A DNA stretch of 64,000 nt from Lepidodermella squamata (lineage: Eukaryota > Animalia > Gastrotricha). Shown here piece by piece: positions 2,705 through 64,000 of the stretch; the stretch's first letter is position 1, and every line of letters begins with the position of its first letter. Location: NCBI GenBank assembly GCA_047495785.1, contig JBLDXI010000064.1, forward strand, positions 372,001 to 436,000, read 5' to 3'. A model generated the notes under the pieces. That model was not told where the DNA came from, made no database searches, and worked only from the letters and a program-made list of their open reading frames with translations. The translations under genes and the position numbers were made by a program.

Positions 2705-5265
2705 GGTTGCGCACCAAAGGTCCCACAGGGACGGAGTCCCCAATAAGCCATAGAGTACGGCGCATCAGCTACTGCTGATGCGGAAGGGGTTATAGGAAAT
2801 TTTGGGGAAACTCCTAGGGAAACTCCTGTGATAGCTGTAAAATTCCAAAAAATACCAAAAAATCGGCCATGTTTCAAAACCTCCAATAACTTTTCTTCAA
2901 ACATACCGAACAAACTACTGATTTTTAAACAATTAAAAACGAAAAAATCGCTCTTCCGGTTACGCAATTGCGCAACTACCTTGACCTAACGGCGTAAGGT
3001 CACCGGAGCCGGTCGCCACCACCGCGCGCTGTCGCGCGCGCACACGACCACACACGCGTAATCACCGGCACTCATTATAACCGCGCGCACACTGTGGCTG
3101 CGCCACTGCGCCATTCTTTTTGTTTATTGCCGTTAAAATCTTTTTATGAATTACCAGCTGCCTCCCTCCCCCGGGGGAGGGAGGCATCAGTCATCTTTCT
3201 TAAAAAACATGATATTCAACCCCGGTTTGGAGGGTGGGGGAAATAAAAACCGGCCGATCTTATTTCATCTATAACTTCACCAAAAATAATCCGATTTTGA
3301 AAATTTTTGCGGCAACCGGCAGCTGGTGCCCCGTTTTTCTAGATGGTTGCGCACCAAAGGTCCCACAGGGACGGAGTCCCCATAAGCAATAGAGTACGGC
3401 GCATCAGCCACTGCTGATGCGGATGAGGTTATAGGCCGATTCGCGGAAACTCCTAGGGAAACTCCTGTAATAGCTGTAAAATTCCTAAAAATACCAAAAA
3501 ATCGGCCATGTTTCAAAACCTCCAATGATTTTTCTTCAAACATACCGAACAAACTACTGATTTTTAAACAATTAAAAACGAAAAAATCGCTTCTTCGGTT
3601 ACGCAATTGCGCAACTACCTTGACCTAACGGCGTAAGGTCACCGTAGCCGGTCGCCACCACCGCGCGCGCTGTCGCGCGCGCACACGACCACACACGCGT
3701 AATCACCGGCGCTCATTATAACCGCGCGCACCTGTGGCTGCGCAACTGCGCCATTCTTTTTATTGTATCGCCGTTAAAAACTTTTTATGAATTACCGGCT
3801 GCCTCCCTCCCCCGGGGGAGGGAGGCATCAGTTATCTTTCTTAAAAAACATGATATTTCGCTCCGGTTTGGAGGGTGGGGGAAATAAAAACCGGCCGACC
3901 TTATTTCAACAATAACTTCACCAAAAATAATCCGATTTTGAAAATTTTTGCGGCAACCGGCAGCTGGTGCCCCGTTTTTCTAGATGGTTGCGCACCAAAG
4001 GTCCCACAGGGACGGAGTCCCCAATAAGCGACAGAGTACGGCGCATCAGCGACTGCTGATGCAGAAGGGGTTATGGCCGCTTTGGAATACCTTGCTAGGG
4101 AAATTCCTGTGATACATGTAGAAATTCTAAAAATACCGAAAAATCGGGCAGACTTTCAAGTGGCAGGTAGAAACTTTCCATTTATGCCGCATCAATTGCT
4201 GATTTTTAAAAAATTGAAAACGAATAAATCGCTTCTTTTATTACGCAATTGCGTAACTACCTTGACCTAACGGCGCTAGGTCACCGGAGCCGGTCGCCAC
4301 CGCCGCGCGCTCTCGCGCGCGCACACGACACCTCTTGCGTAATCACCGGCGCTCTATTGTTAACTCACCAGCGCTGTGGCAGCGCTAACAGCGCAACTGG
4401 TATTGGCGCTCGAAACTTTTTATATGCCGTTAAAAACTTTTTATGAATTACCAGCTGCCTCCCTCCCCCGGGGGAGGGAGGCATCAGTCATCTTTCTTAA
4501 AAAACATGATATTCAACCCCGGTTTGGAGGGTGGGGGAAATAAAAACCGGCCGATCTTATTTCATCAATATCTTCATCAAAAATAATCCGAATTTGAAAA
4601 TTTTTGCGGCAACCGGCAGCTGGTGCCCCGTTTTTCTAGATGGTTGCGCACCAAAGGTCCCACAGGGACGGAGTCCCCAATAAGCGATAGAGTACGGCGC
4701 ATCAGCTACTGCTGATGCGGAAGGGGTTATAGGAAATTTTGGGGAAACTCCTAGGGAAACTCCTATGATAGCTGTAAAATTCCAAAAAATACCAAAAAAT
4801 CGGCCATGTTTCAAAACCTCCAATAACTTTTCTTCAAACATAGCGAACAAACTACTGATTTTTAAACAATTAAAAACGAAAAAATCGCCGCTTCAGTTAC
4901 GCAACTACCTTGACCTAACGGCGTAAGGTCACCGGAGCCGGTCGCCACCACCGCGCGCGCGCACACGGCCACACACGCGTAATCACCGGCACTCATTATT
5001 ACCGCGCGCACACTGTGGCTGCGCCACTGCGCCATTCTTTTTGTTTATTGCCGTTAAAAACTTTTTATGAATTACCGGCTGCCTCCCTCCCCCGGGGGAG
5101 GGAGGCATCAGTTATCTTTCTTAAAAAACATGGTATTTAACTCCGGTTTGGAGGGTGGGGGAAATAATAACCGGCCGACCTTATTTCATCAATAACTTCA
5201 CCAAAAATAATCCGATTTTGAAAATTTTTGCGGCAACCGGCAGCTGGTGCCCCGCTTTTCTAGAT
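2705..5265 (+). mobile_element. Four head-to-tail type A units (2705-3344, 3345-3985, 3986-4641, 4642-5265) at ankyrin site 2
   Basis: Repeated TTCTAGAT|GGTTGCGCACC junctions; the units are non-identical subtypes. Confidence 0.9.
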
Positions 5266-8200
5266 GATTGCGCGAACCAACCCGATAGGGTTCCCCTAGC
5301 GGCGGAGCCGCAGCCTGAACCGGAGGTCCAGCGCCTCTCTCTCAACTTCGCCGGTCGAGGCGACTATGGTAGAGGCGTTTTGCGCTGGACGAAAAACAAA
5401 CCTAGGGAATTTTAACGATAAAAATATGGAAAAATAAGTCGTAGATAGATCTTTTTTCGAAGTTATGGACAAACTTTTTTTTGCAAGTTTCACCATACGG
5501 CTGATTTTTGGCGATTTTTTATTCATAAAAAAAATGGAGAACTGCTCATTAATATTCATGAGCTGCTTACGCCGCCGTCTGGGTCACGGATACCGGCACC
5601 CTCATGACCGAGGTTGATTGCATCACACGCGAGAGCCAGGTCGTTGCGGCGCGTCTCTTCGAAATTTCAATTTAAAACCAGTTTGGCGGCCCTCCCTGGG
5701 GGGAGGGCTGCATCAGTGACATTCTGCTAAAAATTCTGCATCGAACAGTCTAAATTTTGTTGATAGGCGATGAACGGTTGATTTTCTATCGAATTTACAA
5801 GTTGCGCGTACATGAAAAAGTGGCGCTCACTCACTGTGTGTGAAATTTTCAAGGCGCGTGTGACACCCAGATAGGTGCATAATTTGTCGTGACAAATTCG
5901 GATTTTTAGATACTAGGAAGGACGGCCGATTTTTTGGTACCAAAACCGCCGTAAGATTCGCAAGATTTCCTTTGACTATAGCGTTTGGCGCGCGATTGAT
6001 TTTTAGTAAAATTAAAAATTTCAATTTTGTCGAGTTTCGTCAATTTTTTTTGACACCTCACCCTGGTAGCGCTCATGTTTGAATGCACGTAGAATGTAGC
6101 AAATTTTGCGCTGAATTTTTAGAGACCAACCTCGTCATTGTAACCCTCATGGTTGTTGCACTATAAGAGGCGCGGTAAATCGCATTTTTCAACCCATTTT
6201 TAGTGCGCGGCGGCGCTCACACACACACTCAGGGTCGATTTCGGTCAAATATTGAGCACGTGCAGTAGTCTTGTGCGCACATACAAATCATTCAGTCCGA
6301 CGTAAAATTTCAAGACGAATCGAACGAGACCACGCCCATCGTCGTAGCACTCACAGTTATTTGCCTATAGAAGGCGCGGTCTATCCACCTTAAAATTTCA
6401 AAATTTCGATGTTTTTGTGATTTTTTCGCGACAGTTTGGAAGAGTCCCTGTGTAATAATGCAACTATTTCTAGTACAAAAATTGACGGGCTTTCGAGCGG
6501 TGAAAACCGCATGTCACCACCTATAACGGTTGTTTGCCTATAAGCCTCGCGGTGAAATGTGAGATAAAAATCAAAGCAAGTACATTTCGAAATTTCGCTT
6601 TTATATTTACGGGTCATATTTCGCTGCGACTTCATTGACGAATTTTCATGAGACATAAGTTATTCGGGGCGTTCTACTTGACGGTACATGCCTCACATTC
6701 ATAAGACACACCTATTTGATGCCACGCCCAAGCCAAAGTCAATTTTTATATATTTTGTTGACCAACTTTGCAATCTCATGTTCCTCATTTTCTTCATTCC
6801 CGCTGTTATATAAATGATTCTAACGCTTAGAGCATAGTAGGCTGGCCAATTAAAGACCAGGCTGGTCGTTTTAGCCCTTTTATTTATGGAGCTACTTATT
6901 TATCGCGCGGTAAAATATCAATTTTTTCGGCTATCGTCAATTTTTTTGACACCTCACCCGCGTAGCGCTCGTATTTGAATGACCCTAGATTGTAGCAAAT
7001 TTTGCGCAGAATTTTTAGAGACCAGCCGCGTCATTGTAGCCCACATGGTTGTTGCACTATAAGAGGCGCGGCAAATCGCGTTTTTCAGCCGATTTTTAGT
7101 GCGCAGCGGCGCTCACACACGCACTCACACGCACTTTCTGTCAAATTTGAAACACATGCAGCAGTGTTGTGCGCACATACCCGTTACACAGGCCGACGTA
7201 GAATTTCAAGACGAACCGAACAAGACTAAGCCCATCTTCGTAGCCCTCATAGTTATTTGCCTATAGTAGGCGCGGTAGAACTTGTTTTGATCCAACTTAA
7301 AACTTGAAATTTCGAGATTTCGACGTTTTTGTGAATTTTTTCGCGACAATACAGAAGCGACCGGGCGTAATGTAATAGCCATATCTAGTACAACATTTCA
7401 CGGGCTATCCACGGGTGAAAACCGCAAGCCGATATCAGCTGCCGTTTTTTGCCCGTAAGCCTCGCGGTAAAATTTGAGATAAAAAACAAGCCCTATCAAT
7501 TTCAAAATATCACTTCTGCAGTTCTGGGTCATATTCTAATGCGAGTTCAGTGGCGAATTTTCATGAGAAATGGGTAATTCGAGGAGCTCTATCGAACGGT
7601 AAATGTCTCATCTTGACAAGGCGCACCCATTTGACAGCACACCCTTTTCTAAGGTCAAAATTTGAACGGGGCCGCGCTTGCATAAAAACAAGTTTCACTC
7701 AAGTATCGCATATCATTCGATAGCCTGTGTTATTCAGGCTTTCATGGGAGTGGTTATTTGTTAAAACAATAAAGTTTGACGCCGCAATTGACCAAAAACT
7801 GATATTTGACATTCGATTTCCCGCCGATCAGGCGCCCGTAATTTTTCCTCATGTTTATTTTGAAAACTAATTTTTTTTATTTTTTCATCATGGTTCAAAT
7901 TGAGTTATAAGCCTGTTTCCCCGTTTTTAGCCCACTTCAAGGTAGCAAAGCACCTCGTTATTACTTGTGAATAATGAAACCATATTGAGGGTAATGAAAG
8001 TGTGCGCCGCCGCGGTTAGCCAGACCATGACCCAGATAGCCAGTTAACCGAGTCACACGACGTAGATAGAGTTATTGGGACATCAATCCCGGTTGCTGCC
8101 ATTCTCGAGGGAATATTGAAGATTGGGGAGGGGCGAAAAGTTCCCCTCCAAGATGGCTAGGAGGGGAATTTCAAGGGGTAGTGATTTAAACCGACTCAAC

Positions 8201-8268
8201 CATTCATGCTCAGCGCAAAGGTGCCAAAACGAACCAAATTAATGTCCTAGCATGGTTTTTTACTGGAT
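5266..8268 (+). mobile_element. Type B non-autonomous element (~3.0 kb) with two diverged ~0.9 kb internal repeats
   Basis: Starts GATTGCGCGAACC, ends TTTTTTACTGGAT. Recurs at 53567 and 61752. Internal repeats start near 6040 and 6935 (gtcaatttttttgacacctcaccc). No credible ORF. Confidence 0.85.
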
Positions 8269-8924
8269 GGTTGCGCACCAAAGGTCCCACAGGGACGAAG
8301 TCCCCAATAAGCGACAGAGTACGGCGCATCAGCGACTGCTGATGCAGAAGGGGTTATGGCCGCTTTGGAATACCTTGCTAGGGAAATTCCTGTGATACAT
8401 GTAGAAAATCTAAAAATACCGAAAAATCGGGCAGGCTTTCAAGTGGCGGGTAGAAACTTTCCATTTTTGCCGCATCAATTGCTGATTTTTAAAAAATTAA
8501 AAACGAAAAAATCGCATTATTTATTACGCAATTGCGTAACTACCTTGACCTAACGGCGCTAGGTCACCGGAGCCGGTCGCCACTGCCGCGCGCTCTCGCG
8601 CGCGCACACGACACCTCTTGCGTAATCACCGGCGCTCTATTGTTAACTCACGCGCTCCGTGGCAGCGCTAATAGCGCAACTGGTAGTGGCGCTCGAAACT
8701 TTTTATATGCCGTTAAAAACTTTTTATGAATTACCGGCTGCCTCCCTCCCCCGGGGGAGGGAGGCATCAGTTATCTTTCTTAAAAAACGTGATATTTAAC
8801 TCCGGTTTGGAGGGTGGGGGAAATAAAAACCGGCCGACCTTATTTCATCAATAACTTCACCAAAAATAATCCGAATTTGAAAATTTTTGCGGCAACCGGC
8901 AGCTGGTGCCCCGTTTTTCTAGAT
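8269..8924 (+). mobile_element. Type A unit, last copy at ankyrin site 2
   Basis: ACTGGAT|GGTTGCG start and TTCTAGAT|cgcaaa end. Absent from the inverted copy at ~58.1 kb. Confidence 0.9.
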
Positions 8925-9026
8925 CGCAAAGCTTCCACGGAAGTCAAAAATAGCAGAGGCTACACTACGTTGATGACTGTTGCAACTGAGAGCGTGCCAG
9001 TTGAAATTCTACAACTTTTGCTAGAT
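8925..9026 (+). CDS. Ankyrin-repeat segment 3 (one repeat, 102 nt) between insertion sites 2 and 3
   Basis: RKASTEVKNSRGYTTLMTVATESVPVEILQLLLD continues segment 2 in frame. Confidence 0.8.
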
Positions 9027-10973
9027 GGTTGCGCACCAAAGGTCCCACAGGGACGAAGTCCCCAATAAGCGACAGAGTACGGCGCATCAGCGACTGCTGA
9101 TGCAGAAGGGGTTATGGCCGCTTTGGAATACCTTGCTAGGGAAATTCCTGTGATACATGTAGAAAATCTAAAAATACCGAAAAATCGGGCAGGCTTTCAA
9201 GTGGCGGCTAGAAACTTTCCATTTTTGCCGCATCAATTGCTGATTTTTAAAAAATTAAAAACGAAAAAATCGCATTATTTATTACGCAATTGCGTAACTA
9301 CCTTGACCTAACGGCGCTAGGTCACCGGAGCCACTGCCGCGCGCTCTCGCGCGCGCACACGACACCTCTTGCGTAATCACCGGCGCTCTATTGTTAACTC
9401 ACGCGCTCCGTGGCAGCGCTAATAGCGCAACTGGTAGTGGCGCTCGAAACTTTTTATATGCCGTTAAAAACTTTTTATGAATTACCGGCTGCCTCCCTCC
9501 CCCGGGGGAGGGAGGCATCAGTTATCTTTCTTAAAAAACGTGATATTTAACTCCGGTTTGGAGGGTGGGGGAAATAAAAACCGGCCGACCTTATTTCATC
9601 AATAACTTCGCCAAAAATAATCCGAATTTGAAAATTTTTGCGGCAACCGGCAGCTGGTGCCCCGTTTTTCTAGATGGTTGCGCACCAAAGGTCCCACAGG
9701 GACGAAGTCCCCAATAAGCGACAGAGTACGGCGCATCAGCGACTGCTGATGCAGAAGGGGTTATGGCCGCTTTGGAATACCTTGCTAGGGAAATTCTTGT
9801 GATACTTGTAGAAAATCTAAAAATACCGAAAAATCGGGCAGGCTTTCAAGTGGCGGCTAGAAACTTTCCATTTTTGCCGCATCAATTGCTGATTTTTAAA
9901 AAATTAAAAACGAAAAAATCGCATTATTTATTACGCAATTGCGTAACTACCTTGACCTAACGGCGCTAGGTCACCGGAGCCGGTCGCCACTGCCGCACAC
10001 GACACCTCTTGCGTAATCACCGGCGCTCTATTGTTAACTCACGCGCTCCGTGGCAGCGCTAATAGCGCAACTGGTAGTGGCGCTCGAAACTTTTTATATG
10101 CCGTTAAAAACTTTTTATGAATTACCGGCTGCCTCCCTCCCCCGGGGGAGGGAGGCATCAGTTATCTTTCTTAAAAAACGTGATATTTAACTCCGGTTTG
10201 GAGGGTGGGGGAAATAAAAACCGGCCGACCTTATTTCATCAATAACTTCACCAAAAATAATCCGATTTTGAAAATTTTTGCGGCAACCGGCAGCTGGTGC
10301 CCCGTTTTTCTAGATGGTTGCGCACCAAAGGTCCCACAGGGACGGAGTCCCCAATACAAAATGCCGCATGCCGCTTTAGCTATCGCTGCCAAGCGTATGA
10401 GGTATATGGCGGTACTGCATTTTTCGCGCAGGGAAACGAATATTTCAGTTATAAATATGAAAAAAATACTGAAAAATCGGCAAGCTTTTCAAGTCTCAGG
10501 TAAAAACTTTCCAATATAATCGCAATAATTTCTGATTTTTAAACAATTAAAAACGAAAAAATCGCTTTATGAATGACGCAACTACTTGACCTAACGGCGC
10601 TAGGTCACCGCTGCCGTACGCCACCACCGCCGCGCGCGCGTCGGTCGCGCGCGCACACGACACCTATTGCGTAATCGCCGGCGCTCTATTGTTAACTCAC
10701 GCGCTCTGTGGCAGCGCTAGGAGCGCAACAGGTAGTGGCGCTCGAAACTTTTTATATGCCGTTAAAAACTTTTTATGAATTACCAGCTGCCTCCCTCCCC
10801 CGGGGGAGGGAGGCATCAGTTATCTTTCTTAAAAAACGTGATATTTAACTCCGGTTTGGAGGGTGGGGGAAATAAAAACCGGCCGACCTTATTTCATCAA
10901 TAACTTCACCAAAAATAATCCGAATTTGAAAATTTTTGCGGCAACCGGCAGCTGGTGCCCCGTTTCTCTAGAT
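9027..10973 (+). mobile_element. Three type A units (9027-9675, 9676-10315, 10316-10973) at ankyrin site 3
   Basis: Host ttgCTAGAT|GGTTGCG followed by repeated unit junctions. Confidence 0.9.
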
Positions 10974-11433
10974 GATTGCGCACCAACGGTCCCACAGGGA
11001 CGGAGTCCCCAATAAGCGATAGAGTACGGCGCATCAGCTACTGCTGATGCGGAAGGGGTTATAGGAAATTTTGGGGAAACTCCTAGGGAAACTCCTGTGA
11101 TAGCTGTAAAATTGCAAAAAATACCAAAAAATCGGCCATGTTTCAAAACCTCCAATAACTTTTCTTCAAATATAACGAACAAACTACTGATTTTAAAACA
11201 TTTTAATACGAAAAAATCGCCTTTTCGGTTACACAATTGCGTAATTACGTTGACCTAACGGCGCTAGGTCACCGGAGCCAGTCGCCAGCGCCGCGCACAC
11301 GACCACAGAAGCGTAATCACCGGCGCTCTATTGTTACTGTGCGCACACTGTGGTTACGCCGTTGAAAACAATTTAACTATGACAAGCTGCCTCCCTCCCC
11401 GGGGGGAGGGAGGCATGAAGAACAAGGAAGTCA

Positions 11434-13215: not shown

Positions 13216-13704
13216 GTACGGAGTCCCCAATAAGCGACAGAGTACGGCGCATCAGTGACTGCTGATGCAGAAGGGGTTATGGCCGCTTTGGAATACCTTG
13301 CTAGGGAAATTCCTGTGATACATGTAGAAATTCTAAAAATACCGAAAAATCCGGCAGGCTTTCAAGTGGCAGGTAGAAACTTTTCATTTTTGCCGCACCA
13401 ATCGCTGATTTTTAAAGAATTAAAAACGAAAAAATCGCTTTATTTATTACGCAATTGCGTAACTACCTTGACCTAACGGCGCTAGGTCACCAGTCCGGTC
13501 GCCACCGCCGCCATCACGACAGTGTTAACGTAATCACTAGCACTCTTCTATAACCGCACGCACGCTGTGACAGCGCTATCAGCGAAAGAAGTATTGCCGT
13601 GAAAAACTTTTTATCAATTACAGGCTGCCTCCCTCCCCCGGGGGAGGGAGGCATCACTTATCTTCATTAGGGAGCAAGACATTTCTGAAAATCTAGCAAA
13701 ATTC

Positions 13705-21315: not shown

Positions 21316-21619
21316 GCCAATAATTTTGAGAGTGGATTAAACTCCTCATAAGCCTCATAATCGCCTTGTTGGCAGCATTTGTTCAGAATTTTCGTCCTGT
21401 TTGTATTTTATGTGCGCAATTATGTTATGTTCTAGTAGCGTGTTAGTGAAATGCAGGCGTAATACCTCCATATTAATTGTTAATCAAAATAAAAATTTCA
21501 AATCTGTACAAGATCACCTTCGTTTTACTTATTCGAACAAAGCTTCCTCAATGAGCCAACAACAAGGCTTCACCGGTTACCAACAAAGCTACAAAAAACG
21601 CAACAAAACATGAAGGCAT

Positions 21620-31606: not shown

Positions 31607-31910
31607 GCCAATAATTTTGAGAGTGGATTAAACTCCTCATAAGCCTCATAATCGCCTTGTTGGCAGCATTTGTTCAGAATTTTCGTCCTGTTTGTATTTT
31701 ATGTGCGCAATTATGTTATGTTCTAGTAGCGTGTTAGTGAAATGCAGGCGTAATACCTCCATATTAATTGTTAATCAAAATAAAAATTTCAAATCTGTAC
31801 AAGATCACCTTCGTTTTACTTATTCGAACAAAGCTTCCTCAATGAGCCAACAACAAGGCTTCACCGGTTACCAACAAAGCTACAAAAAACGCAACAAAAC
31901 ATGAAGGCAT

Positions 31911-53566: not shown

Positions 53567-56548
53567 GATTGCGCGAACCAACCCGATAGGGTTCCCCTAG
53601 CGGCGGAGCCGCAGCCTGAACCGGAGGTCCAGCGCCTCTCTCTCAACTTCGCCGGTCGAGGCGACTATGGTAGAGGCGTTTTGCGCTGGACGAAAAACAA
53701 ACCTAGGGAAACGAATTTTAACGATAAAAATATGGAAAAATAAGTCTTAGATAGATCTTTTTTCGAAGTTATTGACAAACTTTTTTTTGCAAGTTTCACC
53801 ATACGGCTGATTTTTGGCGATTTTTTATTCATAAAATAACTGCTCCACCGCTCATTAATATTCATGAGCTACTTACGCCGCCGTCTGGGTCACGGTTACC
53901 GGCACCCTCATGACCGAGGTTAATTACCTCACACGCGAGAGCCGGGTCGTTGCGATGCATCTCTTCGAAATTTCAATCTAAAACCAGTTTGGCGGCCCTC
54001 CCTGGGGGGAGGGCAGCATCAGTGACATTCTACGGAAAATTCTGCATCGAACAGTCTAAATTTGGACGCTGGGCGATAAACGGTTGATTTTTTATTGAAT
54101 TTACAAGTTGCGCGCACTTGAAAAAGTAGCCCTCACTAACTGTATGTGAAACTTTCAAGGCGCGGGTGCCACCCAGATAGCTGCGGAATTTGTCGGGACA
54201 AAGTCGGTTTTTTAGATAGTAGAAAAGATGGCCGATTTTTTGGTACCAAAACCGCTGCGAGATTCGCAAGATTTCCTTTGACTATAGCGTTTGGCGCGCG
54301 ATAGATTTTTAGTGAAAATTAAAATTTCAGTTTTTTGGAGTTTCGTCAATTTTTTTGACACCTCACCCGGTTAGCGCTCAGGTTTAATTGCACGTAGAAT
54401 GTAGCAAATTTTGCGCAGAATTTTTAGAGACCAGCCGCGTCATTGTAGCCCTCATGGTTGTTGCACTATAAGAGGCGCGGCAAATCGCGTTTTCAGCCTA
54501 TTTTTAGCGCGCCGGCGGCGCTCACACACACACTCAGGGTCGATTTCGGTCAAATATTAAGCACGTGCAGTAGTTTTGTGCGCACATACAAATCATTCAG
54601 TCCGACGTAAAATTTCAAGACGAATCGAACGAGACCGCGCCCATCGCCGTAGCACTCACAGTTATTTCCCTATAGAAGGCGCGGTCTATCCACCTTAAAA
54701 TTTCAAAATTTCGATGTTTTTGTTATTTTTTCGCGACAGTTTGGAAGAGTCCCTGTGTTATAATGCAACCATTTCTAGTACAAAAATTGACGGGCTTTCG
54801 AACGGTGAAAACCGCATGTCACCACCTATCACGGTTGGTTGCCTATTATAAGCCTCGCGGTAAAATGTGAGATAAAAATCAAAGCAAGTACATTTCGAAA
54901 TTTCGCTTTTATATTTACGGGTCATATTTCACTGCGACTTTTCATGAGACATAAGTTATTCGGAGCGTTCTACTTGACGGTACATGGTACATGCCTCGCA
55001 TTCATAAGACACGCCCATTTGATGCCACGCCCAAGCCAACGCCAATTTTTATATATTTTGTTGACCAACTTTGTACTCTCATGTTCCTCATTTTCTTCAT
55101 TCGCGCTGTTATATAAATGATTCCAACGCTTAGAGCATAGTAGGCTGGATAATTTAAGACCAGGCTGGTCGTTTTAGCCCTTTTTTTTTATGGAGCTACT
55201 TATTTATGGAGCGGTAAAATTTCAATTTTTTCGGCTGTCGTCAATTTTTTTGACACCTCACCCGGGTAGCGCTCAGGTTTAATTGCACGTAGAATTTTGC
55301 GCAGAATTTTTTGAGACCAGCCGGGTCATTGTAGCCCTCATGGTTGTTGCACTATAAGAGGCGCGGCAAATCGCGTTTTTCAACCTATTTTTAGCGTGCC
55401 GGCCGCACTCACGCGCTCACAGTGAGTCGATATCTGTCAAATTTAAAACACATGCAGCAGCTTTGTGCGCACATAGCAATAATACAGGCGGACGTAGAAT
55501 TTCAAGACGAATCGAACGAGCCTAGGCCCATCGTCGTAGCCCTTATGTTTTTTTGTGTATAAGCGCCGCGGTAAATCTTGCTTCGATCCACCTTAAAACT
55601 GGAAAATTTCGAAATTTCGATTTTTTTGTGAATTTTTTCGCGACAATACGGAAGCGTCCGGGCGTTATTTAATTTCCATTGCTAGTGCAACATTTCACGG
55701 GCTATGCAACAGTGACAACCGCAAGTCAATATCAGCTACCGTTTTTTGCTCGTAGCCCACGCGGTAAAATTAGAGATAAAAACAAACCAAGCATATTTTG
55801 AAATTTCGCTTGCCCGATTCTGGGTCTTATTCAACAGCATGTTCAGTTGCGAATTTTCATGAGAAATGGGTAACTCGAGGCGCTCTGTCGAACGGTACAT
55901 GTCTCACTTTCACGAGGCGCACCTATTTGACAGCACACCATATGCCAGGGTCAAATTTTGAGCAGGGCCGCGCCAACAGGCAAACAAGTTTCAAATATAT
56001 GTATCTTATGTTATTTGATAGCTTGAGTTATTTGCTATATCCTGGAGCTGTTTTTTGTCAAAATATTCAAATTTTGGCACTAAAATTGACCAAAAACTGA
56101 TTTTCGACATGAAATGTGCTGCCGGTGACGCCCGTGTTTTTCGTTGACGATATGAAAACCAATTCTCTTTGGATCATGGTAAATTAACTTGTAAGCCTGT
56201 TCTCCTATTTTTAGCTTATTTCGAGGTAATAATGCAGAAACCGCAATTTGTACATAATGAAATTATATTGAGGGTAACAATATAAGTGTGCGCCGCCGCC
56301 GTTAACCGGGTCGTGACCCAGATAACCAGTTAACAAGGTAATAAGATGTAGATAGGTTTATTAAGGCATCGATTACTGCATTTTCGAGAGAATATTGAAG
56401 ATTCGGGAGGGGCGAAAAAAGTTCCCCTCCAAGATGGCTAGGAGGGGAATTTCAAGGGGTAGTGACGTAACCCGCCTAAACTTGTCATGCTCAGCGCAAA
56501 GCTGCCAAAACGAACCAAATAATTTCCTAGCATGGTTTTTTACTGGAT
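53567..56548 (+). mobile_element. Type B element, diverged copy
   Basis: Same termini as 5266-8268 with many internal substitutions. Confidence 0.85.
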
Positions 56549-59500
56549 GGTTGCGCACCAAAGGTCCCACAGGGACGGAGTCCCCAATAAGCGATAGAGT
56601 ACGGCGCATCAGCTACTGCTGATGCGGAAGGGGTTATAGGAAATTTTGGGGAAACTCCTAGGGAAACTCCTGTGATAGCTGTAAAATTCCAAAAAATACC
56701 AAAAAATCGGCCATGTTTCAAAACCTCCAATAACTTTTCTTCAAACATAGCGAACAAACTACTGATTTTTAAACAATAAAAAACGAAAAAATCGCTCTTC
56801 CGGTTACGCAATTGCGCAACTACCTTGACCTAACGGCGTAAGGTCACCGTAGCCGGTCGCCAGCACCGCGCGCTGTCGCGCGCGCACACGACCACACACG
56901 CGTAATCACCGGCGCTCATTATAACCGCGCGCACCTGTGGCTGCGCAACTGCGCCATTCTTTTTATTGTTGTGCGCGCGCTGATTATTAACAGCTTGGTT
57001 GCAAACACGTTTGTCGGCCGCAATCCCCTTCACAACATCACACACGTCTCAGTGAGCAGCCCAAATGTGCACAATTCTTCGCCGATTCTAACGATATAGG
57101 CCACGCCTATACTCCAATAACAGGTGATTAGTCAACGTTGACTTTTCAATTGTTCACGCGGGCGAACACATTGAAGGACGTATTTACCAAGTGTTTTCAC
57201 GCAATTCGCTGCGAAACAAAAACTGCGCGCAGATAATTTTTATATCATTAACTGCAGAATTCTTTGCCATTACTTTCAATATCAAACACGCTCATACACG
57301 CACAAGCTGAAATGATAAAAAATTAGCCTTGTTGCACAGTCATGTTATTGTGCGTACTTGTTGTGCGCGCGCTGATTATTAACAGCTTGGTTGCAAACAC
57401 GTTTGTCGGCCGCAATCCCCTTCACAACATCACACACGTCTCAGTGAGCAGCCCAAATGTGCACAATTCTTCGCCGATTCTAACGATATAGGCCACGCCT
57501 ATACTCCAATAACAGGTGATTAGTCAACGTTGACTTTTCAAGTGTTCACGCGGGCGAACACTGACTTCCTTGTTCTTCATGCCTCCCTCCCCCCGGGGAG
57601 GGAGGCAGCTTGTCATAGTTAAATTGTTTTCAACGGCGTAACCACAGTGTGCGCACAGTAACAATAGAGCGCCGGTGATTACGCTTCTGTGGTCGTGTGC
57701 GCGGCGCTGGCGACTGGCTCCGGTGACCTAGCGCCGTTAGGTCAACGTAATTACGCAATTGTGTAACCGAAAAGGCGATTTTTTCGTATTAAAATGTTTT
57801 AAAATCAGTAGTTTGTTCGTTATATTTGAAGAAAAGTTATTGGAGGTTTTGAAACATGGCCGATTTTTTGGTATTTTTTGCAATTTTACAGCTATCACAG
57901 GAGTTTCCCTAGGAGTTTCCCCAAAATTTCCTATAACCCCTTCCGCATCAGCAGTAGCTGATGCGCCGTACTCTATCGCTTATTGGGGACTCCGTCCCTG
58001 TGGGACCGTTGGTGCGCAATCATCTAGCAAAAGTTGTAGAATTTCAACTGGCACGCTCTCAGTTGCAACAGTCATCAACGTAGTGTAGCCTCTGCTATTT
58101 TTGACTTCCGTGGAAGCTTTGCGATCCAGTAAAAAACCATGCTAGGACATTAATTTGGTTCGTTTTGGCAGCCACCATCGCCACCACCGCGCGCTATCGC
58201 GCGCGCACACGACCACACACGCGTAATCACCGGCGCTCATTATAACCGCGCGCACCTGTGGCTGCGCAACTGCGCCATTCTTTTTATTGTATCGCCGTTA
58301 AAAACTTTTTATGAATTACCGGCTGCCTCCCTCCCCCGGGGGAGGGAGGCATCAGTTATCTTTCTTAAAAAACATGATGTTCAACCCCGGTTTGGAGGGT
58401 GGGGGAAATAAAAACCGGCCGATCTTATTTCATCAATAACTTCACTAAAAATAATCCGATTTTGAAAATTTTTGCGGCAACCGGCAGCTGGTGCCCCGTT
58501 TTTCTAGATGGTTGCGCACCAAAGGTCCCACAGGGACGGAGTCCCCAATAAGCGATAGAGTACGGCGCATCAGCTACTGCTGATGCGGAAGGGGTTATAG
58601 GAAATTTTGGGGAAACTCCTAGGGAAACTCCTGTGATAGCTGTAAAATTCCAAAAAATACCAAAAAATCGGCCATGTTTCAAAACCTCCAATAACTTTTC
58701 TTCAAACATAGCGAACAAACTACTGATTTTTAAACAATAAAAAACGAAAAAATCGCTCTTCCGGTTACGCAATTGCGCAACTACCTTGACCTAACGGCGT
58801 AAGGTCACCGTAGCCGGTCGCCAGCACCGCGCGCTGTCGCGCGCGCACACGACCACACACGCGTAATCACCGGCGCTCATTATAACCGCGCGCACCTGTG
58901 GCTGCGCAACTGCGCCATTCTTTTTATTGTATCGCCGTTAAAAACTTTTTATGAATTACCGGCTGCCTCCCTCCCCCGGGGGAGGGAGGCATCAGTTATC
59001 TTTCTTAAAAAACATGATGTTCAACCCCGGTTTGGAGGGTGGGGGAAATAAAAACCGGCCGATCTTATTTCATCAATAACTTCACTAAAAATAATCCGAT
59101 TTTGAAAATTTTTGCGGCAACCGGCAGCTGGTGCCCCGTTTTTCTAGATGGTTGCGCACCAAAGGTCCCACAGGGACGGAGTCCCCAATAAGCGATAGAG
59201 TACGGCGCATCAGCTACTGCTGATGCGGAAGGGGTTATAGGAAATTTTGGGGAAACTCCTAGGGAAACTCCTGTGATAGCTGTAAAATTCCAAAAAATAC
59301 CAAAAAATCGGCCATGTTTCAAAACCTCCAATAATTTTTCTTCAAACATACCGAACAAACTACTGATTTTTAAACAATTAAAAACGAAAAAATCGTTTCT
59401 TCGGTTACGCAATTGCGCAACTACCTTAACCTAACGGCGTAAGGTCACCGGAGCCGGTCGCCACCACCGCGCGCTGTCGCGCGCGCACACGACCACACAC

Positions 59501-61751
59501 GCGTAATCACCGGCGCTCATTATAACCGCACGCACACTGTGGCTGCGCCACTGCGCCATTCTTTTTGTTTATTGCCGTTAAAAACTTTTTATGAATTACC
59601 GTCTGCCTCCCTCCCCCGGGGGAGGGAGGCATCAGTTATCTTTCTTAAAAAACATGATATTTAACTCCGGTTTGGAGGGTGGGGGAAATAAAAACCGGCC
59701 GACCTTATTTCTTCAATAACTTCACCAAAAATAATCCGAATTTGAAAATTTTTGCGGCAACCGGCAGCTGGTGCCCCGTTTTTCTAGATGGTTGCGCACC
59801 AAAGGTCCCACAGGGACGGAGTCCCCAATACAAAATGCCGCATGGCGCTTTAGCTATCGCTGCCAAGCGTATGAGGTATATGGCGGTACCACATTTTTCG
59901 CATAGGGAAACGAATATTACAGTTACAAAATTAAAAAAAATACTGAAAAATCGGCGAGCTTTTTAAGTCTCATGTAAAAACTTTCCAGCATAATCGCAAT
60001 AATTTCTGATTTTTAAACAATTAAAAACGAAAAAATCGCTTTATTGATTACGCAACAACTTGACCTAACGGCGCTAGGTCACCGGTGCCGTACGCCACCA
60101 CCGCCGCGCGCGCGACGGACGCGCGCGCACACGACACCTATTGCGTAATCGCCGGCGCACAGCTATAACCGCGCGCACATTGTGGTAGCGCTAGGAGCGC
60201 AACAGGTAGTGGCGCTCGAAACTTTTTATATGCCGTTAAAAACTTTTTATGAATTACCGGCTGCCTCCCTCCCCCGGGGGAGGGAGGCTTCAATCATCTT
60301 TCTTAAAAAACATGATATTCAACCCCAGTTTGGAGGGTGGGGGGAAATAAAAACCGGCCGATCTTATTTCATCTATAACTTCACCAAAAATAATCCGATT
60401 TTGAAAATTTTTGCGGCAACCGGCAGCTGGTGCCCCGTTTTTCTAGATGGTTGCGCACCAAAGGTCCCACAGGGACGGAGTCCCCAATACAAAATGCCGC
60501 ATGGCGCTTTAGCTATCGCTGCCAAGCGTATGAGGTATATGGCGGTGCTGCATTTTTCGCGTAGGGAAACGAATATTTCAGTTATAAATATGAAAAAAAT
60601 ACTGAAAAATCGGCGAGCCTTTCAAGTCTCAGGTAAAAACTTTCCACCATAATCGCAATTATTCCTGATTTTTAACAAATTAAAAACGAAAAAATCGCTT
60701 TATCGATGACGCAACAACTTGACCTAACGGCGCGAGGTCACCGGTGCCGTACGCCACCACCGCCGCGCGCGCGACGGTCGCGCGCGCACACGACACCTAT
60801 TGCGTAATCGCCGGCGCTCTATTGTTAACTCACGCGCTCTGTGGCAGCGCTAGGAGCGCAACAGGTAGTGGCGCTCGAAACTTTTTATTCGCCGTTAAAA
60901 ACTTTTTATGAATTACCAGCTGCCTCCCTCCCCCGGGGGAGGGAGGCATCAGTTATCTTTCTTAAAAAACATGATATTCAAACCCGGTTTGGAGGGTGGG
61001 GGAAATAAAAACCGGCCGATCTTATTTCATCAATAACTTCACCAAAAATAATCCGATTTTGAAAATTTTTGCGGCAACCGGCAGCTGGTGCCCCGTTTTT
61101 CTAGATGATTGCGCACCAAAGGTCCCACAGGGACGGAGTCCCCAATACAAAATGCCGCATGGCGCTTTAGCTATCGCTGCCAAGCGTATGAGGTATATGG
61201 CGGTACCACATTTTTCGCATAGGGAAACGAATATTACAGTTACAAAAATTAGAAAAATACCGAAAAATTGGCGAGCCTTTCAAGTCTCAGGTAAAAACTT
61301 TCCAATATAATCGCAATAATTTCTGATTTTTAATAAATTAAAAACGAAAAAATCGCTTTATCGATGACGCAACAACTTGACCTAACGGCGCTAGGTCACC
61401 GGTGCCGTACGCCACCACCGCCGCGCGCGCGCACACGACACCTATTGCGTAATCGCCGGCGCTCTATTGTTAACTCACGCGCTCTGTGGCAGCGCTAGGA
61501 GCGCAACAGGTAGTGGCGCTCGAAACTTTTTATATGCCGTTAAAAACTTTTTATGAATTACCGGCTGCCTCCCTCCCCCGGGGGAGGGAGGCATCAGTTA
61601 TCTTTCTTAAAAAACATGATGTTCAACCCCGGTTTGGAGGGTGGGGGAAATAAAAACCGGCCGACCTTATTTCATCAATAACTTCACCAAAAATAATCCG
61701 ATTTTGAAAATTTTTGCGGCAACCGGCAGCTGGTGCCCCGTTTTTCTAGAT
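56549..61751 (+). mobile_element. Six type A units (56549-58509 interrupted, 58510-59149, 59150-59789, 59790-60448, 60449-61106, 61107-61751)
   Basis: Repeated CTAGAT|GGTTG or CTAGAT|GATTG junctions. Confidence 0.9.
56966..58172 (-). other. Inverted templated insertion: type B 3' end + ankyrin segment 3 + large-element 5' end + ~1.5 copies of the 392-bp repeat
   Basis: Reverse complement of 8222-8268 + 8925-9026 + 10974-~12030. Flanked by a ~110 bp re-copy of the host unit, with ttgt microhomology at the left junction. Confidence 0.9.
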
Positions 61752-64000
61752 GATTGCGCGAACCAACCCGATAGGGTTCCCCTAGCGGCGGAGCCGCAGC
61801 CTGAACCGGAGGTCCAGCGCCTCTCTCTCAACTTCGCCGGTCGAGGCGACTATGGTAGAGGCGTTTTGCGCTGGACGAAAAACAAACCTAGGGAAACGAA
61901 TTTTAACGATAAAAATATGGAAAAATAAGTCGTAGATAGATCTTTTTTCGAAGTTATGGACAAACTTTTTTTTGCAAGTTTCACCATACGGCTGATTTTT
62001 GGCGATTTTTTATTCATAAAAAAAATGGAGAACTGCTCATTAATATTCATGAGCTGCTTACGCCGCCGTCTGGGTCACGGATACCGGCACCCTCATGACC
62101 GAGGTTGATTGCATCACACGCGAGAGCCAGGTCGTTGCGGCGCGTCTCTTCGAAATTTCAATTTAAAACCAGTTTGGCGGCCCTCCCTGGGGGGAGGGCT
62201 GCATCAGTGACATTCTGCTAAAAATTCTGCATCGAACAGTCTAAATTTTGTTGATAGGCGATGAACGGTTGATTTTCTATCGAATTTACAAGTTGCGCGT
62301 ACATGAAAAAGTGGCGCTCACTCACTGTGTGTGAAATTTTCAAGGCGCGTGTGACACCCAGATAGGTGCATAATTTGTCGTGACAAAGTCGGATTTTTAG
62401 ATACTAGGAAGGACGGCCGATTTTTTGGTACCAAAACCGCCGTAAGATTCGCAAGATTTCCTTTGACTATAGCGTTTGGCGCGCGATTGATTTTTAGTAA
62501 AATTAAAAATTTCAATTTTGTCGAGTTTCGTCAATTTTTTTTGACACCTCACCCTGGTAGCGCTCATGTTTGAATGCACGTAGAATGTAGCAAATTTTGC
62601 GCTGAATTTTTAGAGACCAACCTCGTCATTGTAACCCTCATGGTTGTTGCACTATAAGAGGCGCGGTAAATCGCATTTTTCAACCCATTTTTAGTGCGCG
62701 GCGGCGCTCACACACACACTCAGGGTCGATTTCGGTCAAATATTGAGCACGTGCAGTAGTCTTGTGCGCACATACAAATCATTCAGTCCGACGTAAAATT
62801 TCAAGACGAATCGAACGAGACCACGCCCATCGTCGTAGCACTCACAGTTATTTGCCTATAGAAGGCGCGGTCTATCCACCTTAAAATTTCAAAATTTCGA
62901 TGTTTTTGTGATTTTTTCGCGACAGTTTGGAAGAGTCCCTGTGTAATAATGCAACTATTTCTAGTACAAAAATTGACGGGCTTTCGAGCGGTGAAAACCG
63001 CATGTCACCACCTATAACGGTTGTTTGCCTATAAGCCTCGCGGTGAAATGTGAGATAAAAATCAAAGCAAGTACATTTCGAAATTTCGCTTTTATATTTA
63101 CGGGTCATATTTCGCTGCGACTTCATTGACGAATTTTCATGAGACATAAGTTATTCGGGGCGTTCTACTTGACGGTACATGCCTCACATTCATAAGACAC
63201 ACCTATTTGATGCCACGCCCAAGCCAAAGTCAATTTTTATATATTTTGTTGACCAACTTTGCAATCTCATGTTCCTCATTTTCTTCATTCCCGCTGTTAT
63301 ATAAATGATTCTAACGCTTAGAGCATAGTAGGCTGGCCAATTAAAGACCAGGCTGGTCGTTTTAGCCCTTTTATTTATGGAGCTACTTATTTATCGCGCG
63401 GTAAAATATCAATTTTTTCGGCTATCGTCAATTTTTTTGACACCTCACCCGCGTAGCGCTCGTATTTGAATGACCCTAGATTGTAGCAAATTTTGCGCAG
63501 AATTTTTAGAGACCAGCCGCGTCATTGTAGCCCACATGGTTGTTGCACTATAAGAGGCGCGGCAAATCGCGTTTTTCAGCCGATTTTTAGTGCGCAGCGG
63601 CGCTCACACACGCACTCACACGCACTTTCTGTCAAATTTGAAACACATGCAGCAGTGTTGTGCGCACATACCCGTTACACAGGCCGACGTAGAATTTCAA
63701 GACGAACCGAACAAGACTAAGCCCATCTTCGTAGCCCTCATAGTTATTTGCCTATAGTAGGCGCGGTAGAACTTGTTTTGATCCAACTTAAAACTTGAAA
63801 TTTCGAGATTTCGACGTTTTTGTGAATTTTTTCGCGACAATACAGAAGCGACCGGGCGTAATGTAATAGCCATATCTAGTACAACATTTCACGGGCTATC
63901 CACGGGTGAAAACCGCAAGCCGATATCAGCTGCCGTTTTTTGCCCGTAAGCCTCGCGGTAAAATTTGAGATAAAAAACAAGCCCTATCAATTTCAAAATA
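61752..64000 (+). mobile_element. Type B element, truncated by the window end
   Basis: Near-identical to 5266 onward. Confidence 0.88.

What the first reader, a model, noticed from the sequence alone, without database searches (positions are those of the whole stretch)
2705..64000. Element 3' end recreates its own target, giving self-growing head-to-tail arrays of over 55 kb
Seen: type A and the large element end TTTCTAGAT and type B ends TTACTGGAT, both matching the host CTRGAT. About 21 elements are stacked with no spacer (1 at site 1, 6 at site 2, at least 14 at site 3). Neighbours are often different subtypes (A1, A2, A3, B, autonomous), which simple tandem duplication or a single rolling-circle concatemer would not produce. 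Inference: each insertion leaves a new landing pad, so the array is a record of successive independent insertions. GAT is present on both sides of every element, so the sequence alone cannot separate a 3-bp TSD from a target-mimicking end. The HUH mechanism favours the latter.
Basis: partly seen in the sequence, partly recalled or inferred. Interest (0 to 1): 0.85.

Follow-up and report, generated by a model that had tools for sequence, protein, structure and literature searches.

The report
Self-targeting Helitron-like transposon arrays
A family of rolling-circle (Helitron-like) transposons in an invertebrate-type genome inserts right after the short motif CTRGAT and itself ends in that motif, so copies pile up head-to-tail at the same spots; the idea is largely right, but most of the 55 kb is satellite DNA and segmental duplication rather than stacked insertions.

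Summary
On the + strand, all 21 unit starts (G[GA]TTGCGC) directly follow CTRGAT. Three of these motifs are host sequence in ankyrin-repeat codons and 18 are the 3' end of the preceding unit. The counts 1, 6 and 14 are reproduced.

The 16 complete ~640-bp units form three clades that are interleaved along the arrays. Only 1 of 16 has its nearest relative next to it. Two 659-bp units are identical but have different neighbours. An inverted, 100% identical copy of part of the locus lacks four units exactly at their junctions, giving natural empty sites.

The linked coding element shares its last ~120 nt with the short units. It encodes an HUH/two-tyrosine Rep, a Pif1 helicase and a C-terminal GIY-YIG nuclease. 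Its Rep model matches only the Helraiser Helitron transposase.

Serial, sequence-specific, orientation-specific integration at reusable CTRGAT pads is the best explanation.

Caveats:
- About 29 kb of "site 3" is 392/425-bp satellite plus a ~10-kb repeated block inside one composite element.
- One stretch is an inverted duplication that carries host DNA.
- The host pad persists after insertion, so the mimic is not strictly needed for growth.
- IS801 and IS1294 already show a target identical to the terminus cleavage site.

Verdict: a new variant of a known kind, of moderate interest.

The parts
1423..1860 (+). Host ankyrin-repeat coding sequence ending in the occupied target ...TTGCTGGAT (site 1). 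It also holds an identical unoccupied paralogous motif at 1756.
   Evidence: Read directly. CTRGAT table.
1861..2500 (+). E01, an A1-type non-autonomous unit (640 bp), the single insertion at site 1
   Evidence: Junctions ttgctggat|GGTTGCGC and CTAGAT|cgcaac. A1 clade.
2501..2704 (+). Host ankyrin-repeat coding sequence between sites 1 and 2. Unoccupied motif at 2600; occupied target CTGCTGGAT at 2696-2704.
2705..5265 (+). Site 2, first four units: E02 (A1, 2705-3344), E03 (A1, 3345-3985), E04 (A2, 3986-4641), E05 (A1, 4642-5265)
   Evidence: Exact CTAGAT|GGTTGCGC junctions. Clades.
5266..8268 (+). B1, a ~3-kb non-coding B-type element. Its 5' end is GATTGCGCGAACC and its 3' end TTACTGGAT. It has an internal ~900-bp duplication.
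   Evidence: no ORF of 120 aa or more
8269..8924 (+). E07 (A2), inserted directly after the B1 end. It is absent from the inverted copy, which gives an empty site.
8925..9026 (+). Host ankyrin-repeat piece of 102 bp, ending in the site-3 target TTGCTAGAT
9027..10973 (+). Site 3, first three units: E08 (A2, 9027-9675), E09 (A2, 9676-10315), E10 (A3, 10316-10973). All three are absent from the inverted copy.
10974..52252 (+). Composite large element bounded by canonical junctions. Parts: A1-like 5' part 10974-11420; 392-bp satellite 11434-13215; partial A 13205-13700; 425-bp satellite arrays 13705-19144, 23581-29435 and 33070-40299; 3.3-kb unique segments 19145-22440 and 29436-32733; coding region about 41800-51120; A-type 3' tail 52125-52252. 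Its internal history is unresolved.
42487..51120 (+). Transposase gene with at least 6 GT-AG introns of 50-60 nt. Parts: OTU-like region 42487-43089; Rep (HUH HVH, tyrosine motif YLVKY) within 45471-48029; Pif1 helicase 49091-50131; GIY-YIG 50640-51000, spliced across 50764-50815. There is one apparent frameshift near 50095-50104.
52253..53566 (+). E20 (A3, 52253-52911, identical to E27) and E21 (A2/A3 recombinant, 52912-53566)
53567..56548 (+). B2, the second B-type element, ending in TTACTGGAT
56549..56975 (+). E23p, the 5' 427 nt of an A1 unit, broken at a junction with inverted satellite
56976..58170 (-). Inverted, 100% identical copy of [last 47 nt of B | 102-bp host piece | 5' part of the large element | 392-bp satellite]. 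It lacks E07 and E08-E10.
   Evidence: 1046/1046 and 102/102 identities; read
58171..58509 (+). E24p, the 3' part of an A1 unit
58510..61751 (+). Five stacked units: E25 (A1, 58510-59149), E26 (A1, 59150-59789), E27 (A3, 59790-60448), E28 (A3, 60449-61106), E29 (A3, 61107-61751)
61752..64000 (+). B3, the third B-type element, cut off by the end of the window

Best explanation
This is a family of Helitron-like rolling-circle transposons. It comprises one coding element and two kinds of non-coding derivatives: A (~640 bp, three subtypes) and B (~3 kb).

The coding element encodes an OTU-like region, an HUH two-tyrosine Rep, a Pif1 helicase and a GIY-YIG nuclease.

The elements integrate in one orientation immediately 3' of a T-rich CTRGAT motif. 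Each element also ends in T-rich CTRGAT.

Proposed mechanism (inferred, by analogy with IS91-family and IS608 chemistry): Rep cleaves single-stranded DNA after the same motif three times. It cleaves at the left boundary, where the motif is supplied by the flank; at the element's own right end; and in the target.

Integration therefore neither destroys the host motif nor leaves a scar, and it adds a second copy of the motif at the new right end. Both motifs can be hit again, so unrelated copies accumulate head-to-tail with exact CTRGAT|G[GA]TTGCGC junctions.

Later events enlarge and scramble the locus: satellite expansion inside the large element, a ~10-kb segmental repeat, an inverted duplication and inter-unit recombination.

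Shown here: the junctions, the empty sites, the interleaved phylogeny, the identical copies in different contexts, the shared termini and the enzyme family. Inferred: the position of the nick within or next to GAT, the absence of a duplication, and the role of the GIY-YIG domain.
For: Junctions: 21 of 21 unit starts directly follow CTRGAT, 3 host and 18 element ends. All three host sites are the same codon motif (TGCTRGAT) of an ankyrin repeat, in one orientation.

Independent insertions:
- The nearest relative is adjacent for 1 of 16 units. Adjacent identity is 87.3% against a permutation mean of 83.2% (P=0.052).
- Tree sister pairs E01-E25, E10-E28 and E20=E27 lie far apart.
- E20 and E27 are 659/659 identical, and identity decays within 30-50 nt outside the unit.

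Empty sites: the inverted copy, identical over 1046+102+47 nt, reads B-end TTACTGGAT|cgcaaag and ttgctagat|GATTGCGCACC. It lacks E07 and E08-E10.

No reciprocal mosaics occur at heterotypic junctions.

The coding element shares its last ~120 nt with the A units.

Enzyme:
- HVH and YLVKY motifs are present; H293/H295 are invariant and Y478/Y482 nearly invariant across 61 relatives.
- The family profile hits Helraiser 7LCC at E=1.3e-5.
- 36 of 61 relatives match Pfam Helitron_like_N.
- The AlphaFold model (pLDDT 82.7) has 7LCC as its only significant Foldseek hit, E=5.9e-5, probability 1.0.
- Pif1 helicase. GIY-YIG at E=1.7e-7 after splicing.

A conserved 5' hairpin has two compensatory pairs between A and B.

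Precedent: IS801 and IS1294 use GTTC as both target and ter cleavage site and make no duplication (PMC13181058).
Against: - Only one locus in one assembly is available. The three host sites are paralogous repeats, so the true length of the target (6 or 9 nt or more, and possibly the 3' flank CGCAA) is unknown.
- 17 other CTRGAT motifs in the window are unoccupied, including two identical ankyrin motifs.
- The GAT ambiguity means a 3-bp duplication is not excluded.
- The empty sites rest on a 100%-identical inverted segment that could be an assembly chimera or another haplotype.
- Runs of the same subtype (A1-A1, A3-A3-A3) and P=0.052 leave room for some dimer formation or local duplication.
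- The coding copy has an apparent frameshift near 50100.
- The junction stem formed by the subterminal inverted repeat is no more stable than shuffled sequence.
Confidence: 0.7

Rival explanations
1. Terminator read-through or rolling-circle concatemers. Arrays arise because Rep skips the 3' signal. Multimers, or several neighbouring units, are then copied and inserted as one piece.
For: This is the usual explanation for tandem Helitron arrays in bat and silkworm (PMC4067079; PMC5876387). Same-subtype runs exist (E02-E03, E25-E26, E27-E29), and adjacent identity is slightly raised, P=0.052.
Against: - 10 of 17 element-element junctions join different subtypes or types.
- Only 1 of 16 units has its nearest relative adjacent.
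- No multi-unit block recurs. E20=E27 is identical only within single-unit bounds.
- The empty sites show single-position gains.
- It does not explain the CTRGAT host sites.
Confidence: 0.12
2. Post-insertion recombination. A few adjacent insertions were expanded by unequal crossing-over, segmental duplication or gene conversion, or by homologous recombination of excised circles into resident copies.
For: This certainly acts at the locus:
- a ~10-kb block repeated at 99.4-99.6% identity;
- the inverted duplication;
- E21 as an A2/A3 recombinant;
- 3' tail haplotypes shuffled among subtypes.
TE dimers are known seeds of arrays (bioRxiv 10.1101/158386).
Against: - Units within arrays differ by 4-25% and are phylogenetically interleaved.
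- No higher-order periodicity exists among the short units.
- No reciprocal mosaics occur at heterotypic junctions.
- E07 sits between a B end and host DNA, where there is no homology to recombine with.
Confidence: 0.1
3. Same self-renewing target, but with a true 3-bp GAT duplication. The elements would end in ...CTA or ...CTG, and staggered nicks 3 nt apart (for example Rep on one strand and GIY-YIG on the other) would duplicate GAT.
For: GAT flanks every unit and occurs once in the empty sites. A second nuclease domain is present.
Against: HUH single-strand transposons (Helitrons, IS91, IS200/IS605) generally make no duplication (PMC10288648; PMC13181058). GAT is invariant at all 21 junctions, which is also what an element-borne end would give.
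Confidence: 0.15
4. Assembly artefact. Repeats were mis-joined so that the stacking, the identical units or the inverted segment are not real.
For: The locus is extremely repetitive. E20=E27 and the inverted segment are 100% identical, as collapsed or chimeric reads could be.
Against: Most stacked units differ from their neighbours by 4-25%, with consistent exact junctions. Misassembly would not produce that pattern. Sites 1 and 2 have host sequence on both sides.
Confidence: 0.05

Closest known systems
HLE2 group of Helitron-like elements (Helentron/Helitron2) and their non-autonomous HINEs such as DINE-1
   Same: - A large Rep-helicase protein with an upstream OTU-like region and a C-terminal endonuclease.
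- The 5' terminus pairs with a 3' subterminal sequence, followed by a small palindrome.
- The target context is T-rich.
- Abundant short non-autonomous derivatives share the termini.
- Elements carry tandem repeats (PMC4067079; PMC11417382).
   Different: - The target is CTRGAT rather than a TT dinucleotide.
- The nuclease is GIY-YIG, not an AP endonuclease.
- No DUF6570 domain was detected.
- The Rep only marginally matches Pfam Helitron_like_N.
IS91 family (IS801, IS1294), bacterial HUH two-tyrosine rolling-circle insertion sequences
   Same: - Orientation-specific insertion next to a short specific motif, with no duplication.
- In IS801 and IS1294 the target tetranucleotide GTTC equals the ter-end cleavage tetranucleotide.
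- Read-through (one-ended transposition) occurs (PMC13181058).
   Different: These are bacterial elements with no fused helicase or GIY-YIG domain and a 4-nt motif. Long mixed arrays are not a noted feature. There is no sequence relationship beyond the HUH fold.
Telomere-repeat-targeting Helitrons of Paramecium aurelia (a third Helitron clade)
   Same: Site-specific, strictly oriented insertion by a Helitron-like element. [quoted passage not shown] Non-autonomous derivatives exist (PMC13085455).
   Different: Their target is a host tandem repeat (C4A2), not a motif carried by the element's own end. The host lineage differs. No GIY-YIG domain is mentioned in the paper's text (0 occurrences).
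Canonical Helitron (HLE1) tandem arrays in bat, silkworm, maize and Xenopus
   Same: Head-to-tail junctions and arrays occur, and distantly related Helitrons are sometimes directly adjacent (PMC4067079; PMC5876387; PMC12001565). The Rep fold matches Helraiser.
   Different: Canonical elements have 5'-TC and CTRR-3' ends and an AT target. Their arrays are ascribed to terminator bypass, not to a terminus that copies a 6-nt target.
IS200/IS605 (IS608)
   Same: Subterminal hairpins and no duplication (the latter stated in PMC5876387).
   Different: It has a single-tyrosine enzyme and uses cut-and-paste through a circle. The right-end motif differs from the target, so the end is not itself a target.
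Double insertion of site-preferring transposons as seeds of tandem arrays (P element, hobo, R1)
   Same: The principle that an insertion preserves or regenerates its preferred site, so that dimers and arrays follow (bioRxiv 10.1101/158386).
   Different: There the site is regenerated by a target-site duplication made by DDE or retro-elements. Here it is most likely carried by the element's own end.

Membership tests
Helitron-like elements (Rep-helicase rolling-circle transposons) | Rep domain with an HUH motif and a two-tyrosine motif | tested here: met
   HVH and YLVKYxxGK are present in 45471-48029. H293/H295 are invariant and Y478/Y482 nearly invariant across 61 relatives.
Helitron-like elements (Rep-helicase rolling-circle transposons) | Rep homologous to known Helitron Rep | tested here: met
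   The window protein scores below the Pfam cut-off (20.6-21.4 against 28.9 bits). However, 36 of 61 relatives match Helitron_like_N. The family profile hits Helraiser 7LCC at E=1.3e-5. The model (pLDDT 82.7) has 7LCC as its only significant fold match, probability 1.0.
Helitron-like elements (Rep-helicase rolling-circle transposons) | Pif1-type helicase fused downstream of Rep | tested here: met
   PIF1 at E=1e-15. PDB Pif1 helicases and the Helraiser helicase are matched. The region is collinear with 2500-aa relatives.
Helitron-like elements (Rep-helicase rolling-circle transposons) | No target-site duplication | tested here: inconclusive
   GAT flanks every unit and occurs once in empty sites. 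A 3-bp duplication and an element-borne end give the same sequence.
HLE1 (canonical Helitron) | 5'-TC and CTRR-3' termini | tested here: not met
   Units start with G[GA]TTGCGC and end with CTRGAT. The ends fit neither terminus in the same reading: choosing a CTAG 3' end makes the unit start with AT, and B would then end in CTGG.
HLE1 (canonical Helitron) | Insertion between host A and T | tested here: inconclusive
   This is possible only if the nick lies within GA|T. The sequence cannot place the nick.
HLE2 (Helentron/Helitron2) | Short inverted repeat between the 5' terminus and a 3' subterminal site, with a palindrome before the 3' end | tested here: inconclusive
   The 5' GGTTGCGC pairs with GCGGCAACC 27-36 nt from the 3' end, enclosing GGCA...TGCC. 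In B, TTGCGC pairs with GCGCAA 48-55 nt from the end. The stems are short and no better than shuffles.
HLE2 (Helentron/Helitron2) | Insertion between T and T | tested here: not met
   The junctions are GAT|G and GAT|C, and the empty sites read GAT|C. Only the upstream context is T-rich.
HLE2 (Helentron/Helitron2) | AP endonuclease at the C-terminus (Helentron) and the DUF6570 marker | tested here: not met
   The C-terminus is GIY-YIG. No Exo_endo_phos or DUF6570 hit was found in the window pieces or in the relatives.
IS91 family | Bacterial HUH two-tyrosine transposase without a helicase; oriIS/terIS ends; tetranucleotide target | tested here: not met
   The gene is eukaryotic, with introns and a fused Pif1 helicase. 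Only the logic of target equal to ter motif is shared.
Replitrons | Single-tyrosine Rep without a helicase; short direct terminal repeats | tested here: not met
   A two-tyrosine motif and a fused helicase are present. Replitron features as described in PMC10288648.

The most novel reading that the evidence does not exclude
The Rep-Pif1-GIY-YIG proteins found here, in an ostracod, a tunicate, a hagfish and many metagenomes, may mark a distinct and so far uncharacterised clade of Helitron-like elements. Its Rep would use one 6-9-nt motif for initiation, termination and target cleavage. That would make it a naturally scarless, orientation-specific, sequence-specific single-strand DNA integrase of animals, whose arrays record successive integrations.
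Probability: 0.3. Interest if true: 0.75.

Novelty: new variant of a known kind. Interest (0 to 1): 0.55.

Why it matters
Helitron-like elements are normally described as choosing only a dinucleotide (AT or TT). Their tandem arrays are usually put down to terminator bypass.

This locus differs. The element has a longer, oriented target that equals its own 3' end. In-window empty sites and an interleaved phylogeny show that arrays can be built by repeated independent integration.

If this holds genome-wide, it has four consequences:
- It links eukaryotic Helitron-like transposition to the cleavage logic of bacterial IS91-type elements.
- It gives a simple route from transposon to satellite-like array.
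- It explains how one gene's repeated codon motif can become a transposon sink.
- It points to a Rep-Pif1-GIY-YIG lineage whose site specificity could be tested biochemically.

Tried and rejected
- An exact scan of metagenome contigs for the A-type 3' end found nothing.
- Exact-protein look-ups of two window ORFs found nothing on record, so no further copies from the same genome could be examined.
- Host identification through the protease exon gave only weak trypsin hits.
- The 265-aa ORF in the 3.3-kb unique segment has no Pfam hit and no homologue.
- Rfam and tRNA scans of the window were empty, so the A units are not small-RNA-derived SINEs.
- The first structure prediction, from 10 sequences, was unusable (pLDDT 45). 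It was repeated with 61 sequences.
- A phmmer search and a 10-sequence profile of Rep against PDB gave nothing.
- Termini of related elements could not be defined. L005 and L006 are the same locus. The two Cyprideis loci share only coding similarity. The repeats downstream in L004 were uninterpretable.
- CTAGAT at 40546 was considered as the true left boundary of the coding element. Neither side resembles A or B termini, so the left end remains undefined.
- A DDE-type cut-and-paste origin was rejected: there are no terminal inverted repeats, and the 3' tail is shared with an HUH-encoding element.

Full report
**What the window is.** The sequence is eukaryotic. It has ~50-60-nt GT-AG introns, a trypsin/CCP-like gene and an ankyrin-repeat gene at 590-2704 and 8925-9026. 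It is not human. The nearest named relatives of its transposase come from an ostracod (Cyprideis torosa), a tunicate (Styela clava) and a hagfish (Myxine glutinosa). The host species could not be identified.

**The observation.** TTTCTAGAT occurs 17 times and TTACTGGAT twice. I cut the sequence at every GAT|G[GA]TTGCGC.
- This gives 16 complete A units of 624-659 bp.
- It gives three B elements of ~3 kb (5266-8268, 53567-56548, 61752 onward).
- It gives one large composite (10974-52252) and one rearranged A unit (56549-58509).

All 21 unit starts on the + strand directly follow CT[AG]GAT. Three of these motifs are host sequence (1855, 2699, 9021), each the same ankyrin codon motif TGCTRGAT. 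The other 18 are the last six bases of the preceding unit. CTRGAT is expected once per 2048 positions. Three independent host junctions in the same phase of a ~100-nt repeat are therefore far beyond chance. Seventeen other CTRGAT motifs are unoccupied, including two identical ankyrin motifs at 1756 and 2600. The motif is thus not saturated, and the full target may be longer.

Most of "site 3" is not stacked elements.
- 11434-13215 is a 392-bp satellite.
- 13705-19144, 23581-29435 and 33070-40299 are arrays of a related 425-bp satellite.
- Between them lie 5'-truncated A copies and a 3.3-kb unique segment.
- Together these form a ~10-kb block present twice in full, plus a third satellite array, at 99.4-99.6% identity.

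All of this lies inside a region bounded by canonical junctions at 10974 and 52252. I treat that region as one composite element with an unresolved internal history. Separately, 56976-58170 is an inverted copy of the last 47 nt of B, the 102-bp host piece, the 5' part of the composite and some 392-bp satellite.

**Are the arrays serial insertions?** The 16 complete A units fall into three well-supported clades:
- A1: E01, E02, E03, E05, E25, E26.
- A2: E04, E07, E08, E09.
- A3: E10, E20, E27, E28, E29.
- E21 is a clean A2 (5') / A3 (3') recombinant.

Along the arrays the subtypes are interleaved, both with each other and with B. The evidence for independent insertion is as follows.
- The nearest relative is an immediate neighbour for only 1 of 16 units.
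- Mean identity of adjacent pairs is 87.3%, against 83.2% in permutations (P=0.052).
- Sister pairs lie far apart: E01-E25, E10-E28 and E20=E27.
- E20 and E27 are identical over all 659 nt but have different neighbours on both sides. Identity decays 30-50 nt outside the unit.

**Natural empty sites.** The inverted segment is 100% identical to its parent: 1046/1046 nt of element and satellite, 102/102 nt of host and 47 nt of the B end. Yet it lacks E07 and E08-E10. It reads TTACTGGAT|cgcaaag and ttgctagat|GATTGCGCACC.
- E07 therefore entered exactly after a B element's own end. This shows that an element end is used as a landing pad.
- E08-E10 entered exactly after the host motif, upstream of the resident composite. 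This shows that the host pad survives the first insertion and is used again.

The mimic is thus sufficient for growth but not necessary. The segment could be a true inverted duplication, a second haplotype or a chimeric join. In all but the last case it documents precise unit-level presence and absence.

**Rival routes.**
- Concatemers or read-through cannot give junctions between diverged subtypes, and no multi-unit block recurs.
- Homologous recombination of circles into resident copies predicts reciprocal mosaics at heterotypic junctions. None is seen, and E07 has no homology on either side.
- Recombination does act at the locus, however. Examples are E21, shuffled 3'-tail haplotypes, the ~10-kb repeat and the inverted copy.
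- A 3-bp GAT duplication cannot be excluded from sequence alone. It would change the chemistry but not the self-renewing logic.

**The enzyme.** The composite ends with a coding element whose last ~120 nt are those of the A units. Its gene has at least six short GT-AG introns. It is collinear with 1700-2800-aa relatives:
- an OTU-like region at 42487-43089 (relatives carry Pfam OTU);
- Rep at 45483-49028;
- a Pif1 helicase at 49106-50104;
- a C-terminal GIY-YIG domain, which passes the Pfam cut-off once the 50764-50815 intron is removed (E=1.7e-7). Relatives carry it too.

There is one frame change without a gap near 50095-50104. It suggests a frameshift or a base-calling error.

Rep contains HVH and YLVKYxxGK. 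Across 61 relatives the two histidines are invariant and the two tyrosines nearly so. The window protein alone is below the Pfam Helitron_like_N cut-off. However, 36 of 61 relatives match that family and the family profile hits Helraiser at E=1.3e-5. A confident model (pLDDT 82.7, pTM 0.84) has the Helitron transposase 7LCC as its only significant structural match (E=5.9e-5, probability 1.0). No AP endonuclease and no DUF6570, the HLE2 marker, were found.

**DNA signals.**
- A and B share the 5' G[GA]TTGCG.
- Both have a 5-bp hairpin with an invariant GGA loop ~25 nt from the 5' end, differing by two compensatory pairs: GGGAC/GTCCC against GCGGC/GCCGC.
- Both have a long central G/C palindrome.
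- Across a head-to-tail junction, the 3' subterminal GCGGCAACC can pair with the next unit's 5' GGTTGCGC. This leaves the T-rich CTAGAT unpaired next to the stem. It is an HLE2-like layout, but no more stable than shuffled sequence.

**Mechanism proposed.** Rep nicks single-stranded DNA after T-rich CTRGAT at the left boundary (motif in the flank), at the right end (motif in the element) and in the target. It then joins the element's first base to the target's GAT-3'OH. This is the logic of the IS91 family. In IS801 and IS1294 the target GTTC is also the ter cleavage tetranucleotide and no duplication is made (PMC13181058). As I recall it from general knowledge, IS608 likewise keeps its target motif at the left flank. 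The position of the nick, the absence of a duplication and any role of the GIY-YIG domain (for example second-strand nicking) are inferences.

**Comparison with the literature.**
- Helitron-like elements are described as inserting at AT (HLE1) or TT (HLE2) (PMC11417382).
- Tandem Helitron arrays, and even adjacent unrelated Helitrons, are known and are usually ascribed to terminator bypass (PMC4067079; PMC5876387).
- Site-specific Helitrons were reported for Paramecium telomeric repeats, also with satellites between ORF and ends (PMC13085455).
- The general rule that an insertion which preserves its site breeds tandems is established for other transposons (bioRxiv 10.1101/158386).
- A GIY-YIG domain in a Helitron-like element is mentioned once, as a capture in a moss family (PMC11417382).

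**Verdict.** This case is a new variant of a known kind. It has a 6-9-nt oriented target equal to the element's own terminus, mixed arrays with internal evidence of serial integration, and a Rep-Pif1-GIY-YIG lineage spread across animals and metagenomes (472 representative relatives). The size claim is inflated, the precedent is closer than implied, and the evidence rests on one locus. Interest 0.55.

Noticed in passing
window 50640-51000 (intron 50764-50815); relatives P0003, P0006, P0008, P0010: The transposase ends in a GIY-YIG nuclease instead of the AP endonuclease of Helentrons. The same Rep-Pif1-GIY-YIG architecture occurs in Cyprideis torosa, Styela clava, Myxine glutinosa and many metagenome proteins. 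This may be a separate Helitron-like lineage.
   Followed up: partly
window 56976-58170 (minus strand) against 8222-8268, 8925-9026 and 10974-12019: An inverted segment is 100% identical to its parent but lacks four units. Its breakpoints lie inside an A unit and inside the 392-bp satellite, with 4-nt microhomology. It could be a real fold-back duplication, another haplotype or an assembly chimera.
   Followed up: partly
window 11434-40299: Two related satellites (392 bp and 425 bp, sharing a ~50-nt core) are each preceded by a 5' A-like fragment. They sit in a ~10-kb higher-order block repeated at 99.4-99.6% identity. The repeat breakpoint cuts a minus-strand gene that is complete only in the last copy (32455-32844).
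   Followed up: partly
window 20518-21315 and 30809-31606 (+); 21620-22051 and 31911-32342 (-): These are orphan ORFs in the 3.3-kb unique segment. The 265-aa one has a Cys-rich CxxC...CCxC stretch. It has no Pfam hit and no homologue among 5.8 billion proteins. Whether these are captured or host genes is unknown.
   Followed up: partly
window 50095-50104: Homologue alignments switch reading frame here without any gap, next to a T run. This is either an inactivating frameshift in the helicase or a base-calling error.
   Followed up: partly
every A unit, e.g. 1861-2500: A units begin G|GT... and end ...TTTTTCTAG|AT. Splicing from that GT to that AG would remove the unit, or a whole A array, and leave exactly one extra GAT codon in frame in the ankyrin gene. 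The donor GTTGCG is weak, and B ends in CTGG, so this may be coincidence.
   Followed up: no
window 2501-2506, 8925-8930, 1762-1767, 2606-2611 against unit 5' ends: The host sequence just 3' of each ankyrin target (CGCAAC or CGCAAA) is the reverse complement of the element's 5' GTTGCG. It also resembles the 3' subterminal repeat. The target may therefore extend 3' of GAT. The sites are paralogous, so this amounts to a single observation.
   Followed up: no
window 52912-53566 (E21); 3' 220 nt of all A units: E21 is a clean A2/A3 recombinant with its breakpoint near unit position 225-260. The 3' tail haplotypes are shuffled among subtypes, which indicates template switching or gene conversion between units.
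   Followed up: yes
window 2730-2742 (A) and 5298-5310 (B): A 5-bp hairpin with an invariant GGA loop is conserved between A and B through two compensatory base-pair changes. It is a candidate Rep recognition element at the left end.
   Followed up: partly
window 41783-41828: An 18-bp repeat (2.6 copies) inside the first coding exon region of the large element contains two unoccupied CTAGAT motifs.
   Followed up: no
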